From Haliotis rubra (Eukaryota), in contig NW_025766956.1 in the NCBI RefSeq assembly GCF_003918875.1, positions 434,001-498,000 on the forward strand: 64,000 nt of DNA. Reading direction: 5' to 3'. This document shows, piece by piece, positions 3,167-29,163 of this stretch. The notes beneath the pieces were generated by a model. The model was given only the letters and a program-made list of their open reading frames with translations, was not told the origin of the DNA and did no database searches. Every line of letters begins with the position of its first letter. Within the stretch, counting starts at the first letter, position 1. A program made the translations under genes and the position numbers.

Positions 3167-3343
3167 NNNNNNNNNNNNNNNNNNNNNNNNNNNNNNNNNN
3201 NNNNNNNNNNNNNNNNNNNNNNNNNNNNNNNNNNNNNNNNNNNNNNNNNNNNNNNNNNNNNNNNNNNNNNNNNNNNNNNNNNNNNNNNNNNNNNNNNNNN
3301 NNNNNNNNNNNNNNNNNNNNNNNNNNNNNNNNNNNNNNNNNNN
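3167..3343. other. Assembly gap (N run)
   Basis: Run of n. Confidence 1.
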
Positions 3344-18849: not shown

Positions 18850-19700
18850 ATATACAACATCCATCAACACTCGTCGATATACAAATCCATCAATACGTTG
18901 TTATACACAATCCATGTACACATCCATGTTGGTATACACAACATCCATTGACCCATATGTTGGTATACACATCTGTCTATCCATAGGTTGTCATATATAC
19001 AACATCCATCTATCCATATTTTGGTATACACAACATCCATTGCTCCATAGTTTGTTATAACAACATCCATCTATCCATAGGTTCGTATACACAACATCCT
19101 TCCATCTATATGTTGGTATACACAACATACACACATATGTATGTAGATATACTCAACATACACATACTCAACATACACATGCATTTGTGCACAACATACA
19201 CACATATGTATGTAGATATACTCAACATACACACATATACATGCATTTATACACAACATACACACATTTGTATGTTGATATACTCAACATACACACATAC
19301 ACATGCATTTATACACAACATACACACATTTGTATGTAGATATACTCAACATACACACATACACATGCATTTATACACAACATACACACATTTGTATGTA
19401 GATATACTCAACATACACACATCCACATACTCAACATACACATGCATTTATACACAACATACACACATATGTATGTTGATATACTCAACATACACATGCA
19501 TTTATACACAACATACACACATTTGTATGTAGATATACATAACATACACACATACATTTATACACAACATACACACATATGTATGTTGATATACTCAACA
19601 TACACACATACACATGCATTTATACACAACATACACACATTTGTATGTAGATATACATAACATACAGACACATGCACGTATACATAACATACACATATAG
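18850..19700. repeat. AC-rich compound minisatellite (about 30- and 60-bp units)
   Basis: Repeated atacacaacatacacacat...gatatactcaacatacac...catgcattt. Confidence 0.9.
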
Positions 19701-23031: not shown

Positions 23032-23729
23032 CTGAAGGGAAAGCAAAAACATAATCAGATGTACGAAAATAGTTTCATCAACATGTATACAAGGGGATAT
23101 CAAACTGATGTTTCACCATTACTTCATGCAGAGTAAGACCTTGGATGACTTTGAAGCATAGAAGTTCATACTGTATCCCCAGGGTTTGTCAGTAATTTGC
23201 AAATATATGGCATATAGTACACTGTCACATTTATTACCAGTAACAGGCACAGATTTACCTCATATCATTTATATGGCCAAAATGTGTTGAAAGATAATTA
23301 TTTTTCAGGTTTCAAATATGAGCTCTCAAAATGCTGGCCCATTCTCCTCCATGGAGTGCAGGCATTTATGAACATTCAGTCATAATTATAGAACAATAAC
23401 TTTAAAAGTTAGACATGTTAATAAGAAAGAATTACGTTCATAGACCAGGGAGAGCCACAGCTTGTGTTTTGTATGTTGGTCGGAACACATGAAGCGAGAT
23501 GATCATACTGGCATGATAGGTAAATCATTAGGAAAAGTGAGATAAACATAGTGAAAATCAATGGCTTTCAATCCCAGAGTGTATGCTCTCTGAAAAACAC
23601 ACACACAAAATCATTCACGAATTCATAAATCCAATTTTCATTAATTTAAATCCAACCTGGTGGTCATCTCAAAAAGACAAGTTGGCAATAGTGAGCATTT
23701 GGCCACGGTAACATGTCTGGATGTCCTAC

Positions 23730-23903
23730 CATTTGGGGAGAAGATGTCCCGGTCGTACACAGTGAGGCAGAGGACATCCTCCTCCAGATCCTTGATGATG
23801 AATTGCATTGAGTGGTTCCACTTTGGGTTGAGCGTGCCCTGGATGACCTTGGTTCGGTGCTCCTGGCTCCCCATGCTCACCTCGCAGTACGGGTCACTCT
23901 TAC
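23730..23903 (-). CDS. ITSN1: Intersectin exon: C2 core ([30 protein letters not shown]...[12 protein letters not shown])
   Basis: 174 nt, phase 1 to 1; C2 consensus SDPY, TLNP.WN, VYDRD. Confidence 0.96.
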
Positions 23904-25232
23904 CTGCACGGAAGGTGGTCACATGGTCATACAAGGTTACATGTGGCACCAGCTGGGTGTGGAGGATATTACTGAATGGGATTGTACACCATAAGACAGA
24001 CGGTCAAGGGGTATAGGAGATGAGTTGTAAATGCTGTCCATTTAGCTAGTGACAAAAGTAACATATTTATCTTGAGGTTCACAAGTTACAAGGACAAGCC
24101 ATGATAAGCGTCTTCTGAGTTGTATATTTATCTGTGATACTGAAAATATGACCTCAAAAGTGAGTGAAATAAATGCTTGAAACTTTTTGTTCCACAAACC
24201 TTATCTCTCATGGTTCACAGAATATATGGTGAATTTACCAAGAACAATGACATTTTAATGTTACTACATATTTCTGTCTACAACTAAAGAATGGTGCATA
24301 GATGTACATGAGAAAATGGAATGCAAGGCCTGGCACCAACAGGGTATCAGGTGTGCTATATAGAAACACTCTACACATCAGGTCACGTGTAGTACGTAGG
24401 TGAAGGTCACACAGCACTGCAAGGCCTGCTATTAACAGTGTATCAGGTATACCACCTGGAAACACACTACACACCAGGTCACACTCAGTACTAAGGTGAA
24501 GGTCACCAGCCACTGCAAGGCAGGCAGCCTACAGTGTGTCAGGTAGAACTCCCTCACTTTCAGTACAACACACAGCAGGCCACAGCAAGGTCATGCATTT
24601 TGTGTTCCTAAACTTTGAAGTCAGAAAGAATAACTATCTATCTCTGTTATTAAACTGTAAGATCATAATTCCATAGTTTATTTTGGTGGGTTTTGTTTAG
24701 TTCCATGCTTGAAATCAGACCCAAAAAATCCTAAAATATGTCATAATCCCACATCGGACACAAAGGAAACAACATTCCACAAAAATATCTACCTCCAAAA
24801 TGAATCCAATGCAATGCGTAAGCTACAAGCATGTAAGTCAGTGGTTTAATGTATCTCTAAACAGTATTTAGTTACATCACAGAAAGTCAGCTTGATGTGG
24901 GAGGAAAGCCTGGGCTGATGTTTTCACTTTGATTTTGGTAAGATCTGTAAACATGGGAATGGTTGCGGCATAGCCAAAAAAAATATTCTAAATGAACCTG
25001 AAATTGAAAGGATAACATATTCCTTCCATGTAACATATGTTATATTTGGGATTACACTTTCTTAGTAAAGCACAAAATCTAGTTCCTTCCATGTTCCCTA
25101 AGAATGGTTGCTGTGACAAAACAAATGTGTCTAATCTGGCATTAGGGTGCCATATTTGTTAAGGACATATCAACCTGTGACCCGGCTATAGTGGAGCTTG
25201 GATGTAATCAGTCTTTGCTGAAATGGTCCTAC

Positions 25233-25310
25233 CATTATTGTCGCTGGCTCGGAGGTTAACAGCTTCCTGTATGACGACGAGCAGCCTGCCAACCCCAGGG
25301 GACTTGCGCA
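25233..25310 (-). CDS. ITSN1: C2 strand-1 exon, variant B (MRKSPGVGRLLVVIQEAVNLRASDNN)
   Basis: catcag| acceptor, ATG|gtagg donor; 78 nt, phase 1 to 1. Confidence 0.88.
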
Positions 25311-25609
25311 CTGATGTACAGATGACAGACAGGTCATGCAATGTTATACAAGGGAGGAGGAGGCAGGCAGACACACCTGGCAGGGAGGGGTCGTCACATC
25401 ACCTGGCACTACACATCAGTAACCACTGTCAGGTCTGACCTCAGACATGGGGTATAGATTATGACAATGATGTGGGAATAATTTGTTCTGTGGCAAAATG
25501 TCTTAGAGTCCATTAGAGACTTTATTGTGATTTAACAATCCCCCAAACTTAAATCTTAAAGTCTCTGTAAAATGCATATTAATGATCTCAACCAGGAACT
25601 TTGAAAGAA

Positions 25610-26062
25610 CATGAGCCAGGAGCTGAAAATTGACATATTGGTACCACTCAGAGGGACCAAAAGTTTTAGTGTTTTTTATATTCCTTTATGTCTCTATATA
25701 ACAATTTTGACTCTTACAAAATCAGGAAAAGCAATGATTTAAAGGTACCAAATATCACAACTTGATATTAATGAAATCTTTTTAATCATGTCACCACTAT
25801 TTTTAAACCACCCCCACCCCTTTCATTTCCAACTGATTTGCTGAACTTTACTCACGATTAAAGCTTGGAATTGACCTTTTTTTTAAAAATTTGGGTTTAT
25901 TGGCGGCCTTTTTGGATTTAGCCTCGTCCTGAGTCTGAGCTACCAAACCGACATGGCCATCATACATTTTTATGTCTAGAGACCATACCAAGTTCAAAAT
26001 ATAAAACATAAAAGTGTTTGGTCCCTCTGATTGGTACCGAAAAATTGTCTGGCTCATGGCCT
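25610..26062. mobile_element. Degenerate inverted-repeat DNA element (possibly Kolobok-like)
   Basis: catgagccag...ttggtacca.tcagagggaccaaa pairs with tttggtccctctgattggtaccga...ctggctcatg(gcct). Confidence 0.55.
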
Positions 26063-27118
26063 AAATTTGAATTGTGTCAAATAACCTTAGATAAAGAATA
26101 TAATATTTTTCATATAATATTTGCCACTGATGTATAGGTAAAGGTGATGTGACAACACCATATATGGCTGCTGGGTGGTAGTGCCCTCTGGAGGTGTGAT
26201 GTGAACCAAGAAGAGACCTGTAACCTAGCTACCATGCTGATATTCCTCTATTTGTCATGGTTTCATGCCTTGAGTTGCCTGAGACTAACAGGGAGGACTA
26301 TACACAGGTTGTATCACAGCTTAAGTGTGGAATTTTTGGTACCAGGAAATTGAAACACATACACCTCACCCCACCCCCAGGATACATTCAGCAACTGAAT
26401 TTAGCTATTAGTTACAACAGAGCAGCCGATCAGATAGCCATTTTTCAGCCCAAGCAATCACAAACTACCAAATTTAATTGTGTAATTATTTAACAATAAT
26501 GATTTTCATTCTGGGGCAATAACCTGTTGTTTCAGTTGAACAGTATTGTTCTCTCCTGAGTCATTGGCTGTGTCTTTGAAATGAATGGTGCCAGTGGGGC
26601 TGACTCTATAAATTGGTCTAAGGCTGGGGTACAAGACATCAAATTCTTCATATGAATGCCTCATGGGCAAGTGACGTTAAAGTTGGAAATGCTACGGCAT
26701 TGAAGTGATGACAGAGAGAGGAGCATCATCGTGAAAAATACATCATACAAAAAAAAAAATATGGTATTAGTACAACCCAATGAACAAACTGTTCCTTAAG
26801 CTTGTATGTACATGTAAGCATGTAGTAGCCAGATTTCATGCAATCCTCATACCAGGTCGCAGCAAGAACATTTCAAGTGAAACACAGACCAGCCTAACTC
26901 ATAAGAACATGCTATCTATATAATAATGACTGAGTCCAAAACTTTCATTCACAGCTTCATCAGAAGGTTATTTGTCCATTGGGGTTGGAACTAAATCTGA
27001 TGTGCTTCTGCTAAAACTGAAACTGAAAGGAACTGCTAGCCATGCAACAGCTGTCGGATACGAAGACGAGGATGCCATGCCATCACTGAAATGAAACACA
27101 TCCATGCTGCAGCCTTAC

Positions 27119-27202
27119 CACCGTCGCTCGTGGACTTGAGGCCAACGCCCTCCAGGATGATGACAAGCAGCCGTCCAACCGGGCGGGAGCGAAGTTGAGC
27201 TA
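27119..27202 (-). CDS. ITSN1: C2 strand-1 exon, variant A ((IA/T)QLRSRPVGRLLVIILEGVGLKSTSDG); probably mutually exclusive with variant B
   Basis: aatag|tag| tandem acceptor (84 or 81 nt), GTG|gtaagg donor; phase 1 to 1; paralogous to exon B; absent from the ORF track. Confidence 0.8.
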
Positions 27203-28081
27203 CTATTGTCATAGAGAGTGTTCAGATTGGCAGACAAAGAATCAAGCCATATGATGAAGTTATTGGAGCCTCTTAAAAGTCATTGTTTGTATCACAAACA
27301 TGCTTCATAGCAGTATTAGAGAATATAATGATGAACAGTGTTACCATAGTTACACAATATTTGTTAAGATATTAAACTGCATATATATGTATATGTATAA
27401 TTCAATACTCAGTGAGACCAATCATTTCACATGAAACACATAAAGAAAATATATGCCAAAATATGGTTGAGAGAAAGGCCATATTGAGTGGGTGTTAGTA
27501 TCATACTGAATAAGTACAAAAAGTTTGAACTAAACTTTGAAATATGACATGGGAGTTTATTAACAATATCAACATTCACTTATTTCCCCATCTAAACTTG
27601 TCACACAAAATTCTCAACCTCTGGCTGATTCTCAATCGGTAATATGAACTACTGATGCTAATGGGATGAGGTGAAATGTGAATAAATGTCACTTTCAAGA
27701 TTATTGCACATTTTCGTGGCTGCTTGGACTAGTTGGACAGTTTTATATTGCGAGCCCACTGAGATACCATGGTACAGTTTAAACATGGATACCTCACTCA
27801 GACACAGTATACCGATTCCCCTTATTGTCTTGTGTCAGCGAGGGTAACAAAAGCACCATTTAATCTTTTCATGTGTGACACAGATGGGCATTTAACCATC
27901 CACCTTCCCCCCTCGAACAGGTGCTCTATCCACAAGACCATGGAGGCAGTTAATGCTAATGGCTCATGGTCATTGGCAATTACCCGCAAGACAGTGACAG
28001 TCTGTGCATACTTAAAACATAACTGATGTATCCCTACACTGACTTCTCCATGTACACTGAGTGGACAAGGTGTCGACTTAC

Positions 28082-28164
28082 TTGAGTGCTGACGCTCCTT
28101 CTTCTTTTTTTCTGTATCTAGATACTGTCTTGATGCTCCTTCAATCTCACGGATCCATAGATCC
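28082..28164 (-). CDS. ITSN1: Intersectin exon: PH C-terminal helix (DLWIREIEGASRQYLDTEKKKKERQHS)
   Basis: 83 nt, phase 2 to 1. Confidence 0.93.
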
Positions 28165-28368
28165 CTGAAAGATTCACACATAATCATCAATAAGAGAAAA
28201 GTATTTAATGGGATCAGGCATCAACAGTGTGTAGTCATTACACACATTCATCTGTGTAGGATTTACAGTTGAGAGTTATCTCCCTTAGCTGAACACAAAT
28301 GGATTAGTCATGTACAGAGGTGAGAGGGGCCTCAAGCATGACATAAAAAAACATAGAGAACATCTTAC

Positions 28369-28493
28369 TTTTCTGTTTCAGTGACTGCTTTGAGATTGAG
28401 AACTCTGTCGAAGTCATATCTGATCTGGAACTGACAGGGGTCACTGTCCGTGTCATTGGACTTGATGAGGATTGCCTCGTTCAACACAATAGG
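28369..28493 (-). CDS. ITSN1: Intersectin exon: PH (PIVLNEAILIK...DRVLNLKAVTETE)
   Basis: 125 nt, phase 0 to 2. Confidence 0.92.
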
Positions 28494-29163
28494 CTGGGGG
28501 AGAAAGGAACACAATTTCATGTGAGCAATTTCATCAGTTGATACATCAAACATGAATATGATAATGCTACTGTGAGTGTTCTTTGAATGTGATATTTCAA
28601 GCCTTTAAACCATAACCAGACAATGCCTTTTTGAAAGTGGTCAAATGTATCTGTGCCAATTTACACTTATCAAGTGGGGTGGGTTCACAAAGTATCTGGT
28701 TTAGACTACCAGTTGTCAGACTTTAATGTTTGTGGAAGCTGCAGGGGCTAAGTGGGTTAGATCAGTGACTTTGTGAGATGAGAGCATGGCTCGAATCCTA
28801 GAGTTGACTCTACCCCTAGTAATTACTGTACTTTACTGAGAAGGTGTAATCCTCTATACTACATATAAGCCTTTAACCAGTTACAATTTAAATGGATAGG
28901 TCACTCTGACAGAATCCATTTCTCAAAAAACTGTGGAGGAAAATGTTTTGAGTTGGAAACGTATCGAAAATGTGGGATGACTGATTCAAAACTGATGTTG
29001 GTCCAGTTGATTTACCAGGTATGTATTCCGTACTCATGACATCACCTGACATCGAACTCAGTCATTAGCAGCAGACATCAGTCTGCAGAGTTATGCTATC
29101 TTCTACACAACTAACAACAAAACTTGACGTGTGTACAACTGTGACCTATGGTGTATTACGTAC

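What the first reader, a model, noticed from the sequence alone, without database searches (positions are those of the whole stretch)
25335..27107. Reciprocal Rbfox-type (U)GCAUG arrangement around the two C2 exons
Seen on the sense (minus) strand: GCATG at 27107-27103 and 27080-27076 and TGCATG at 27046-27041 and 26842-26837, all downstream of exon A, plus TGCATG at 25340-25335, 25 nt upstream of exon B's acceptor. Established: Rbfox proteins bind (U)GCAUG and generally enhance exons from downstream and repress from upstream. Inference: one factor would turn A on and B off, predicting exon A in neurons or muscle and the five-Asp exon B elsewhere.
Basis: partly seen in the sequence, partly recalled or inferred. 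Interest (0 to 1): 0.7.

Follow-up and report, generated by a model that had tools for sequence, protein, structure and literature searches.

The report
Conserved Rbfox-type motifs flank intersectin exons
An abalone intersectin gene has two alternative exons for the first strand of its C2 domain, and the (U)GCAUG splicing-factor motifs between them have been kept at the same places in snails and an oyster, so a Rbfox-type switch is well supported at the DNA level, though the factor and the tissues are untested.

Summary

- **Not chance.** Three GCATG in 80 nt and five in 300 nt downstream of exon A is the densest non-repeat cluster in the 64-kb window (P about 2e-5 to 5e-5).
- **The exons are real alternatives.** RNA contigs join the upstream exon to A or to B, never to both. 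One sample also skips both.
- **The motifs are conserved.** I fetched the orthologous locus from two other Haliotis species, Pomacea, Biomphalaria and the oyster Saccostrea.
  - Nine of eleven GCATG around A and B are identical in three abalones, against 13% of intronic 5-mers.
  - In all four independent lineages a TGCATG lies 11-30 nt upstream of exon B's acceptor. It is the only hexamer they share there. The same 60-nt region holds it at 4.4% of other exons in these genes.
  - The A-B intron is 3-10-fold enriched for GCATG in each lineage.
- **Reading.** These are functional Rbfox-type intronic elements that favour exon A and repress exon B, as at C. elegans egl-15.
- **Not shown.** Rbfox binding, the direction of the switch and the tissue pattern.
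A conserved GCATG 97 nt upstream of exon A, and motifs downstream of exon B in other species.

The scan has noted Rbfox-type motif clusters at two other loci of this genome. This is a new member of a known kind.

The parts
28083..28163 (-). Upstream constitutive exon (end of the PH domain) that splices to exon A, to exon B or directly to the downstream exon
   Evidence: Contig joints 28082|27202, 28082|25310 and 28077(+5)|23898. PH_13 Pfam hit on the ORF that covers it.
27299..27303 (-). GCAUG 97 nt upstream of exon A's acceptor. By position it would be predicted to repress exon A.
   Evidence: Kept in three Haliotis species. No counterpart within 300 nt upstream of exon A in Pomacea, Biomphalaria or Saccostrea.
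27119..27202 (-). Exon A: 84 nt, phase 1. It encodes IAQLRSRPVGRLLVIILEGVGLKSTSDG(G), one version of the first strand and loop 1 of the C2 domain. The acceptor is weak and purine-rich; the donor is GUAAGG.
   Evidence: Joints 28082|27202 and 27119|23903 in run X1. The same peptide occurs in H. rufescens X4, H. cracherodii and H. asinina X1/X2.
26935..27118 (-). Conserved intronic island directly downstream of exon A. It is 84-92% identical in three abalones, as high as exon A itself, and contains three GCAUG.
   Evidence: Three-way identity profile. Alignment A1. No Rfam family and no unusual folding, z -0.27.
27103..27107 (-). aGCAUG, +12 from exon A's donor
   Evidence: Kept in three Haliotis species.
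27076..27080 (-). gGCAUG, +39 from exon A's donor. The core is kept while the flanking bases change.
   Evidence: ATGGCATGG, ACAGCATGG and ACGGCATGG in the three species.
27041..27046 (-). UGCAUG, +73 from exon A's donor (its GCAUG core starts at +74)
   Evidence: Pomacea has UGCAUG at +35 and +136 and aGCAUG at +58.
   Evidence: The core is kept in three Haliotis species although the preceding base differs.
26837..26842 (-). UGCAUG, +277 from exon A (its GCAUG core starts at +278). The core is kept inside diverged flanks.
   Evidence: ATTGCATGAAA, CTTGCATGGGT and ACTGCATGAAT.
26233..26237 (-). aGCAUG in the middle of the A-B intron, inside a second conserved block
   Evidence: It is kept in three Haliotis species. 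The neighbouring GCAUG at 26268-26264 is not kept.
25343..25348 (-). UAUAAC, a putative branch-point sequence 2 nt upstream of the UGCAUG (its candidate branch A lies 3 nt before the motif). This is an inference from sequence only.
   Evidence: Sequence read. It is identical in H. cracherodii and reads CAUAAC in H. asinina. Branch-point use was not tested.
25335..25340 (-). UGCAUG at -30..-25 from exon B's acceptor, in the branch-point and polypyrimidine region. Its position is conserved across molluscs.
   Evidence: Pomacea has it at -11, Biomphalaria at -30 and Saccostrea at -23. It is the only hexamer shared by the four lineages in the last 40-50 nt.
25233..25310 (-). Exon B: 78 nt, phase 1. 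It encodes (M)RKSPGVGRLLVVIQEAVNLRASDNN(G), the alternative first strand and loop 1, with the Asp that is invariant in mollusc B-type exons. The acceptor is pyrimidine-rich; the donor is GUAGGA.
   Evidence: Joints 28082|25310 and 25233|23903 in runs X2 and X3, and the second joint in X4. H. asinina X4 has the same form.
23730..23903 (-). Downstream constitutive exon (KSDPYCEV...), the core of the C2 domain
   Evidence: Contig pieces and joints. Pfam C2, 9.8e-18. Best solved-structure match is intersectin 2, 3jzy.
24592..24597 (-). UGCAUG 636 nt downstream of exon B, kept in three Haliotis species. It is the nearest kept motif on that side in the window species; an unconserved GCAUG at 24708-24704 lies closer.

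Best explanation
The gene on the minus strand is the long (DH-PH-C2) form of an abalone intersectin. Two tandem, homologous, in-frame exons encode alternative versions of the first beta-strand and first loop of the C2 domain: exon A (84 nt) and exon B (78 nt).

The intron between them carries functional (U)GCAUG intronic splicing elements. The most likely binder is the mollusc Rbfox homologue.

Proposed mechanism (inferred, not shown):
- Exon B has the better polypyrimidine tract and is the default choice.
- Where the factor is active, it binds the UGCAUG 25-30 nt upstream of exon B. That site abuts the putative branch point, and binding there hinders recognition of the 3' splice site.
- Binding to the GCAUG cluster at +12, +39 and +74 (and at +207 and +278) downstream of exon A strengthens exon A's definition.
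- One occupied intron therefore shifts the choice from B to A.

Shown here: the exons, their alternative use, the motif cluster, and its conservation over the gastropod-bivalve divergence.

Inferred: the identity of the binding protein, the direction of the switch, and any neuron or muscle specificity.
For: Gene identity:
- RhoGEF, PH_13 and C2 Pfam hits lie in order on the minus strand.
- The best solved-structure match of the C2 exon is intersectin 2.
- The nearest proteins are Haliotis intersectin-1-like.

Alternative use:
- RNA contigs of X2-X4 carry the exon B joints.
- X1 carries the exon A joints and a form that skips both exons.
- All joints fall at GT..AG sites.
- NCBI models list A-only and B-only isoforms in H. 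asinina, Gigantopelta, Babylonia, Littorina, Pomacea and Liolophura, and a skip form in Pomacea.

Local enrichment:
- 5 GCATG in the 300 nt downstream of exon A against 0.31 expected. It is the top-ranked pentamer there.
- Among 160 other exons of the five orthologous genes, none has 2 or more GCATG within 100 nt downstream.

Conservation within Haliotis:
- Introns are about 77% identical between the window species and H. cracherodii.
- 9 of 11 GCATG are identical in three species, against 13% of intronic 5-mers (P 5e-7).
- Three of them keep the core inside changed flanks.

Deep conservation:
- TGCATG lies 11-30 nt upstream of exon B in Haliotis, Pomacea, Biomphalaria and Saccostrea.
- It is the only hexamer shared by the four lineages in the last 40 or 50 nt. 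It is one of two shared within 200-300 nt downstream of exon A.
- Null rates are 1-3% per random 40-nt window and 7/160 for a wider window at other exons. The joint probability is therefore about 1e-5 or less, even leaving out the lineage where the motif was found.
- The A-B intron is enriched in every lineage: 8 against 1.9, 13 against 5.0, 5 against 1.0 and 3 against 0.3. The 300 nt upstream of exon A are not enriched.
- The sense strand is favoured: 8:1, 9:2, 10:1, 3:0 and 5:2.

Published rules:
- GCAUG downstream of an exon enhances it and GCAUG upstream represses it (PMC11874969).
- Rbfox3-like transcripts have been reported in a mollusc (PMC5736919).
Against: - No binding or perturbation data exist.
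- A Haliotis-conserved GCATG lies 97 nt upstream of exon A. By the positional rule it would oppose exon A.
- In Saccostrea (+18), Pomacea (+145, +175) and Biomphalaria (+213, +242), GCATG also lie downstream of exon B. By the same rule they would favour exon B.
- In Saccostrea and Biomphalaria the only motif 'downstream of A' is at +184 and +172. The tight cluster next to exon A's donor is therefore found only in Haliotis and Pomacea.
- In Pomacea sense and antisense counts are equal, 13:12.
- The whole 185-nt island downstream of exon A is conserved in abalones, not the motifs alone. Other elements probably act there too.
- The exon A and skip joints in X1 rest on short contig overlaps of 25-30 letters.
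- The tissues of the four RNA samples are unknown.
Confidence: 0.65

Rival explanations
1. The conserved (U)GCAUG elements are functional, but they act through another factor or through RNA-RNA pairing. One version is a docking/selector-type structure between the island downstream of exon A and the exon B region that coordinates the two exons. On this reading the match to the Rbfox site is incidental or only partial.
For: - The whole 185-nt island downstream of exon A is conserved in abalones, not the motifs alone.
- A 15-nt complementarity of 13/15 links 26988-26974 in that island to 25303-25289 in exon B (pair I8).
- A 34-nt imperfect inverted repeat links 26159-26126 to 25420-25387 (pair I2).
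- A form skipping both exons, and gene models including both, show that exclusivity needs some coordination.
Against: - The only sequence shared by four lineages next to exon B is exactly the 6-nt Rbfox consensus, at varying distance and in unrelated flanks. That points to a short protein site and not to a helix.
- The island folds no better than shuffles, z -0.27.
- Duplex energies between the intron downstream of exon A and the exon B region are within the shuffle range in five of six loci.
- Ten inverted pairs of similar quality occur in the 4.2 kb, so I8 is not above chance. Its first pair is lost in H. cracherodii without compensation.
- There is no Rfam family.
Confidence: 0.15
2. The motifs are true Rbfox sites, but the outcome differs from 'A on, B off in neurons or muscle'. 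For example, Rbfox may mainly silence exon B and give the skipped form. Exon A may be governed by other elements of its island. Or upstream and downstream sites may balance, so that the factor tunes the ratio instead of switching it.
For: - The one universally conserved site is the site upstream of exon B.
- The sample that lacks exon B contigs (X1) shows both the exon A form and the form that skips both exons, at similar depth.
- Pomacea has an annotated skip isoform.
- Motifs downstream of exon B occur in three species, and one lies upstream of exon A in Haliotis.
Against: - The dense, conserved cluster starting 12 nt downstream of exon A's donor in Haliotis, and the three motifs within 136 nt in Pomacea, sit where Rbfox enhancers are typically found (PMC11874969).
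- Contigs cannot give isoform ratios, so X1 does not measure how common the skipped form is.
Confidence: 0.15
3. The arrangement is a chance cluster of a common pentamer in AT-rich introns and has no function.
For: GCATG is not enriched in the window as a whole: 119 against 141 expected. A single TGCATG within 40 nt of an acceptor occurs by chance in about 2% of windows.
Against: - Local cluster P is about 2e-5 to 5e-5.
- 9 of 11 motifs are kept against a 13% background.
- The position is conserved in four lineages that share no other hexamer there.
- 0 of 160 other exons have a comparable downstream cluster, and 4.4% have an upstream TGCATG.
Confidence: 0.03

Closest known systems
[quoted passage not shown]
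   Same: Both are a pair of mutually exclusive exons in which a UGCAUG in the intron just upstream of one exon is bound by Rbfox-family proteins. Binding represses that exon's acceptor, so the partner exon is chosen in one tissue (PMC3585155). Here a UGCAUG sits 11-30 nt upstream of exon B in four mollusc lineages.
   Different: - The gene differs: an FGF receptor there, the intersectin C2 domain here.
- The phylum differs.
- In egl-15 the repressed exon is the upstream member of the pair. Here it is the downstream member, so the same intron is also 'downstream of exon A' and carries an additional GCAUG cluster.
- Binding, cofactors and tissue are untested here.
C. elegans unc-32 exons 7a/7b (ASD-1 and FOX-1 plus UNC-75)
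   Same: A neuron-specific choice between two mutually exclusive exons depends on a conserved intronic UGCAUG and on Rbfox proteins. Conservation among related species pointed to the element (PMC3585155).
   Different: There the UGCAUG lies in the intron downstream of the second exon, and a CELF protein gives the tissue specificity. No CELF-type element was looked for here.
Vertebrate Rbfox 'RNA map' targets (GCAUG downstream activates, upstream represses)
   Same: The motif is the same, the distances are the same (within about 300 nt of the exon), there are clusters of several GCAUG, and the intronic islands are conserved (PMC11874969).
   Different: Vertebrate intersectins have a single exon at this place in the proteins retrieved, so this event has no vertebrate counterpart. 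No CLIP or knock-out data exist for molluscs.
Known alternative splicing of vertebrate ITSN1 (short/long isoforms, neuronal microexon)
   Same: It is the same gene family, and its splicing is heavily regulated and neuron-linked (PMC6547669 and the list).
   Different: Those events lie elsewhere in the gene. Full-text searches found no description of alternative C2 first-strand exons or of their Rbfox control.

Membership tests
Rbfox-regulated alternative exon | (U)GCAUG in the flanking intron within a few hundred nt of the regulated exon, on the sense strand | tested here: met
   - Five motifs lie within 300 nt downstream of exon A.
- One UGCAUG lies 25 nt upstream of exon B.
- The A-B intron holds 8 on the sense strand against 1 antisense.
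Rbfox-regulated alternative exon | Motif frequency above local background | tested here: met
   - 5 against 0.31 expected, P 1.7e-5. The Markov simulation gives 5e-5.
- The A-B intron is enriched in all four lineages.
- 0 of 160 other exons have 2 or more GCATG within 100 nt downstream.
Rbfox-regulated alternative exon | Phylogenetic conservation of the motifs | tested here: met
   - 9 of 11 are kept in three Haliotis species against a 13% background.
- TGCATG upstream of exon B is present in Haliotis, Pomacea, Biomphalaria and Saccostrea. It is the only hexamer they share there.
Rbfox-regulated alternative exon | The exon is alternatively spliced | tested here: met
   Exon A, exon B and skip joints appear in RNA contigs. 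A-only, B-only and skip isoforms appear in NCBI models of other molluscs.
Rbfox-regulated alternative exon | Direct binding of an Rbfox protein to the sites (CLIP, EMSA) | not testable with these tools
   No binding data are available. Only the published specificity of the Rbfox RRM for (U)GCAUG can be cited (PMC11874969, PMC3585155).
Rbfox-regulated alternative exon | Splicing responds to Rbfox level or to mutation of the motifs | not testable with these tools
   This needs a minigene or a knock-down. One sample (X1) differs from three others in exon choice, but its tissue and its Rbfox level are unknown.
Rbfox-regulated alternative exon | An Rbfox orthologue is present and expressed in the organism | not tested
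   No Rbfox sequence obtained from a tool was available as a query. The literature reports RBFOX3-like transcripts in Octopus (PMC5736919) and calls the family conserved across metazoans (PMC3585155).
Mutually exclusive exon pair | Tandem homologous exons of similar length and the same phase, encoding the same structural segment | tested here: met
   - Exon A is 84 nt and exon B 78 nt, both phase 1 and both GRLLV-type first strands.
- Pairs in the same order occur in Pomacea, Biomphalaria and Saccostrea.
Mutually exclusive exon pair | Exactly one of the two is present in each mature mRNA | tested here: inconclusive
   - No contig holds both.
- A form that skips both is seen in X1 and in Pomacea X4.
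- Liolophura, oyster, Biomphalaria and other gene models contain both exons in frame. Some of those may be prediction artefacts.
- Both exon lengths are multiples of 3, so the reading frame does not enforce exclusivity.
egl-15-type acceptor repression | UGCAUG close to the branch point or 3' splice site of the repressed exon | tested here: met
   The motif ends 25, 11, 30 and 23 nt before the exon in the four lineages. In Haliotis it follows a UAUAAC.
egl-15-type acceptor repression | A cooperating tissue-specific cofactor site next to the UGCAUG (SUP-12-type GU-rich element) | not tested
   A GGUGUGU lies about 35 nt upstream of the motif in Haliotis. It was not examined in the other lineages.

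The most novel reading that the evidence does not exclude
The A/B exon pair and the UGCAUG in front of exon B form an ancient, Rbfox-driven switch between two kinds of intersectin C2 domain: one with and one without the conserved loop-1 aspartate. It would have been kept since before gastropods and bivalves split. Because the exon pair also occurs in Lingula, nemerteans, an annelid, chelicerates and amphioxus, it may date to the bilaterian ancestor and have been lost in vertebrates. That would make it one of very few individual Rbfox-regulated splicing events conserved between phyla.
Probability: 0.3. Interest if true: 0.75.

Novelty: new member of a known kind. Interest (0 to 1): 0.55.

Why it matters
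Individual regulated splicing events are rarely conserved across distant animal groups. Almost nothing is known about splicing regulation in molluscs.

Here a specific cis-element, identical to the Rbfox site, has held its place next to one of two alternative exons for roughly half a billion years of mollusc evolution. The time figure comes from general knowledge of the gastropod-bivalve split, not from a test here.

The result gives a concrete, easily tested case of the Rbfox positional code outside vertebrates, flies and worms. It also ties that code to a possible functional toggle of the intersectin C2 domain, the membrane- or Ca2+-binding end of a synaptic endocytosis scaffold. It further suggests how one intron lying between two alternative exons can serve both of them at once.

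Tried and rejected
- **Exact look-up of the ORFs that run through exon A, exon B and neighbouring exons**. None is in the protein collection, so ORF-type calls could not be used to reach orthologous introns.
- **The look-up of encoding contigs misses.** Six proteins were not on record because only the longest isoform is kept. The Gigantopelta gene is too long, at 106 kb, for DNA to be returned. All 12 look-ups are now used, so Lingula, amphioxus, chiton and cephalopod loci could not be examined.
- **RNA-RNA pairing between the intron downstream of exon A and the exon B region**. Duplex energies are not clearly beyond mononucleotide shuffles: z is -1.0 to -2.6, and only H. asinina and Saccostrea are nominally below 5%. 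Whole-segment duplexes are a blunt measure, so this is not excluded.
- **A structured RNA or ncRNA in the conserved island.** There is no Rfam match above noise, and the folding z-score is -0.27.
- **Repeat origin of the cluster.** No direct repeat family lies downstream of exon A. The other GCATG cluster in the window is a 62-nt satellite.
- **Literature.** No paper describes alternative C2 exons of intersectin or their control by Rbfox.
- **Tissue test of the prediction.** The four RNA runs carry coded sample names and are kept only as contigs, so neither tissue nor isoform ratio could be read.
- **Rbfox gene in abalone.** It was not searched for, because no Rbfox sequence from a tool was available as a query and typing one from memory was ruled out.
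Full report
**1. What is at the coordinates**

The window's minus strand carries the 3' half of an intersectin gene.
- ORFs over successive exons hit Pfam RhoGEF, PH_13 and C2, in that order.
- The C2 core exon is most similar to human intersectin 2 among solved structures.
- An HMMER search with that exon, followed by a word search, gives Haliotis 'intersectin-1-like' proteins as nearest relatives: H. rufescens at 96% over the C2 exon, then H. cracherodii and H. asinina.
The window differs from all three named species at a few residues, so it is another Haliotis species.

**2. The two exons are real and are used alternatively**

Four small runs from one study were laid on 23300-28500. They are flagged only as probable RNA, but they contain spliced joints.
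- In X2 and X3, single contigs join 28083 to 25310 and 25233 to 23903. This is exon B, 78 nt. X4 shows the second joint.
- In X1, contigs join 28083 to 27202 and 27119 to 23903. This is exon A, 84 nt, using the upstream of two adjacent AGs.
- Another X1 contig joins 28083 directly to 23903, skipping both exons.
- All joints fall at GT..AG.
- The X1 joints rest on overlaps of 25-30 letters. They agree exactly with NCBI isoform models of relatives: A-only and B-only forms in H. asinina, Gigantopelta, Babylonia, Littorina, Pomacea and Liolophura, and a skip form in Pomacea.
- No contig contains both exons.
- Contigs cannot give ratios, and the sample names are coded. The data show regulated use that differs between samples, but not in which tissue.

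**3. Is the motif arrangement more than chance?**

- GCATG is not over-represented in the window overall.
- The 300 nt downstream of exon A hold five copies against 0.31 expected. GCATG is the most over-represented of all pentamers there (Poisson 1.7e-5). A first-order Markov simulation trained on the surrounding introns gives 5e-5.
- It is the only site in the window, on either strand, with three copies in 80 nt.
- The only other dense cluster is a 62-nt satellite. No repeat family explains the cluster next to exon A.
- Within the A-B intron the sense strand has eight GCATG and the antisense strand one.
- The lone TGCATG upstream of exon B would not be significant by itself.

**4.

Orthologous loci were obtained from NCBI assemblies through the longest annotated isoforms:
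- H. cracherodii (L001)
- H. asinina (L002)
- Pomacea canaliculata (L003)
- Saccostrea cucullata (L004)
- Biomphalaria glabrata (L005)

Each has an A-type exon followed by a B-type exon and then the KSDPYCEV exon, with the same phase.

Within Haliotis:
- Introns of the window and H. cracherodii are about 77% identical.
- The 185 nt downstream of exon A are 84-92% identical in all three species, as high as the exon itself.
- The 60 nt upstream of exon B are nearly invariant.
- Nine of eleven GCATG around the two exons are identical in all three species, against 13% of intronic 5-mers (P 5e-7).
- At three sites the core is kept while the neighbouring bases differ.

Across lineages whose introns no longer align:
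- A TGCATG ends 25 nt (Haliotis), 11 nt (Pomacea), 30 nt (Biomphalaria) and 23 nt (Saccostrea) before exon B.
- An unbiased k-mer comparison shows that TGCATG is the only hexamer common to the four lineages in the last 40 or 50 nt before exon B.
- TGCATG is one of only two hexamers common to the 200-300 nt after exon A. The other is a low-complexity AGTTTT.
- The chance of a TGCATG in a random 40-nt window of these loci is 1-3%.
- At 160 other exons of the same five genes, a more generous window of -60 to +15 holds one in 4.4%.
- The joint probability for the three lineages other than the one where the motif was found is therefore of the order of 1e-5 to 1e-4.
- The A-B intron is enriched for GCATG in each lineage: 8 against 1.9, 13 against 5.0, 5 against 1.0 and 3 against 0.3. 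The 300 nt upstream of exon A contain none outside Haliotis.
- None of the 160 other exons has two or more GCATG within 100 nt downstream.

**5. Interpretation**

- A six-base element kept in place in otherwise unalignable introns, at variable distance, points to a short protein-binding site.
- (U)GCAUG is the well-established recognition sequence of Rbfox proteins. Downstream sites usually enhance an exon and upstream sites repress it (PMC11874969).
- The closest proven precedent is C. elegans egl-15. There ASD-1 and FOX-1 repress one exon of a mutually exclusive pair through a UGCAUG in its upstream intron. unc-32 exons 7a and 7b are a second case (PMC3585155).
- In the present gene the intron between the exons is at once 'downstream of A' and 'upstream of B'. 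Every site in it pushes the same way: towards A and away from B.
- The splice sites fit a default-B model. This is my reading, not a scored test. Exon A has a purine-rich acceptor region but a good GUAAGG donor. Exon B has a long pyrimidine tract.
- In Haliotis the UGCAUG follows a UAUAAC that could be the branch point. Occlusion of branch-point recognition is therefore a plausible route, but an inference only.
- The binding protein, the direction of the switch and the tissue are all inferred.
- Rbfox3-like transcripts have been reported in Octopus (PMC5736919). I did not locate the abalone gene.

**6. Points against a clean 'reciprocal' picture**

- A GCATG 97 nt upstream of exon A is conserved among abalones.
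- Saccostrea, Pomacea and Biomphalaria have GCATG within 18-242 nt downstream of exon B.
- The tight cluster beside exon A's donor is shared by Haliotis and Pomacea. In Saccostrea and Biomphalaria it is replaced by a single site at +184 and +172.
- In abalones the whole island is conserved, so further elements are likely.
- Exclusivity is not absolute. Both exon lengths are multiples of three, a skip form exists, and several gene models contain both exons.

**7. Rivals**

- A structural (docking/selector) explanation was examined. Two inverted-repeat candidates exist. However, such pairs are as common as expected, one loses a pair without compensation, the island does not fold unusually, duplex energies are not clearly beyond shuffles, and Rfam finds nothing.
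- Pure chance is contradicted by sections 3 and 4.
- A different outcome of true Rbfox sites, such as mainly exon B silencing with skipping, cannot be excluded. X1 shows both the exon A form and the skip form.

**8. Context noticed on the way**

- The A/B exon pair is far older than abalones. A-type and B-type first-strand exons occur as alternative isoforms, or fused in gene models, in gastropods, bivalves, a chiton, Octopus, nemerteans, Lingula, an annelid and chelicerates. Amphioxus has two variants.
- The vertebrate proteins retrieved have one exon there.
- In molluscs the B-type exon keeps an invariant Asp (ASDxNG) before KSDPY, and the A-type exon does not.

**9. Novelty and verdict**

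- Full-text searches found no description of these exons or of their Rbfox control.
- Control of mutually exclusive exons by Rbfox is a known kind of system. This is a new, unusually deeply conserved member.
- The scan has also noted Rbfox-type motif clusters at two other loci of this genome. I did not examine them.
The N run at 3167-3343 was left untouched.

Noticed in passing
window 19117-19695: A 62-nt-period satellite (about 9 copies) lies in an intron, and each unit carries TGCATG on the minus strand. It is the window's only other dense GCATG cluster and is a repeat artefact, not a regulatory cluster.
   Followed up: partly
window 25606-26105 (arms 25640-25682 and 25996-26038): A stretch of about 500 nt in the A-B intron is absent from H. 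cracherodii and H. asinina. It contains 43-nt inverted arms 313 nt apart. It looks like a MITE-type insertion specific to the window species.
   Followed up: partly
window 25026-25085 and 27650-27823: Summed contig depth in the RNA runs is very high (hundreds to thousands), with many loose ends. These are dispersed, expressed repeat elements inside the introns, not part of the gene's mRNA.
   Followed up: no
window 26974-26988 and 25289-25303: A 15-nt complementarity (13/15) links the conserved island downstream of exon A to the 5' part of exon B (codons P-G-V-G). It is interesting as a possible exon B masking helix. However, the number of such pairs is not above chance, and one pair is lost in H. 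cracherodii.
   Followed up: partly
window 25233-27202; proteins P0043-P0290: The A-type/B-type exon pair of the intersectin C2 domain is present across molluscs and in Lingula, nemerteans, an annelid, chelicerates and amphioxus. The vertebrate proteins retrieved have one exon. Mollusc B-type exons keep an invariant Asp (ASDxNG). In Lingula the Asp-bearing exon is the first of the two.
   Followed up: partly
window 24589-24597: TGCATGACC lies 636 nt downstream of exon B. It is the same 9-mer as the one just upstream of exon B and is kept in three Haliotis species. It sits next to a region that is a 75-nt-spaced tandem array in H. cracherodii (L001 58926-59612).
   Followed up: no
L001 26140 and 52945; L002 8727 and 31418; L003 14883; L004 10035; L005 17030: A few other intersectin exons have a TGCATG within about 60 nt upstream of their start. 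Whether any of these are orthologous, and so mark further regulated exons such as the SH3A microexon, was not checked.
   Followed up: no
window 25370-25378: A GGUGUGU element lies about 35 nt upstream of the UGCAUG before exon B, and reads GGGUGUGC in H. cracherodii. It recalls the GU-rich SUP-12 site next to the egl-15 UGCAUG. It was not examined in other lineages.
   Followed up: no
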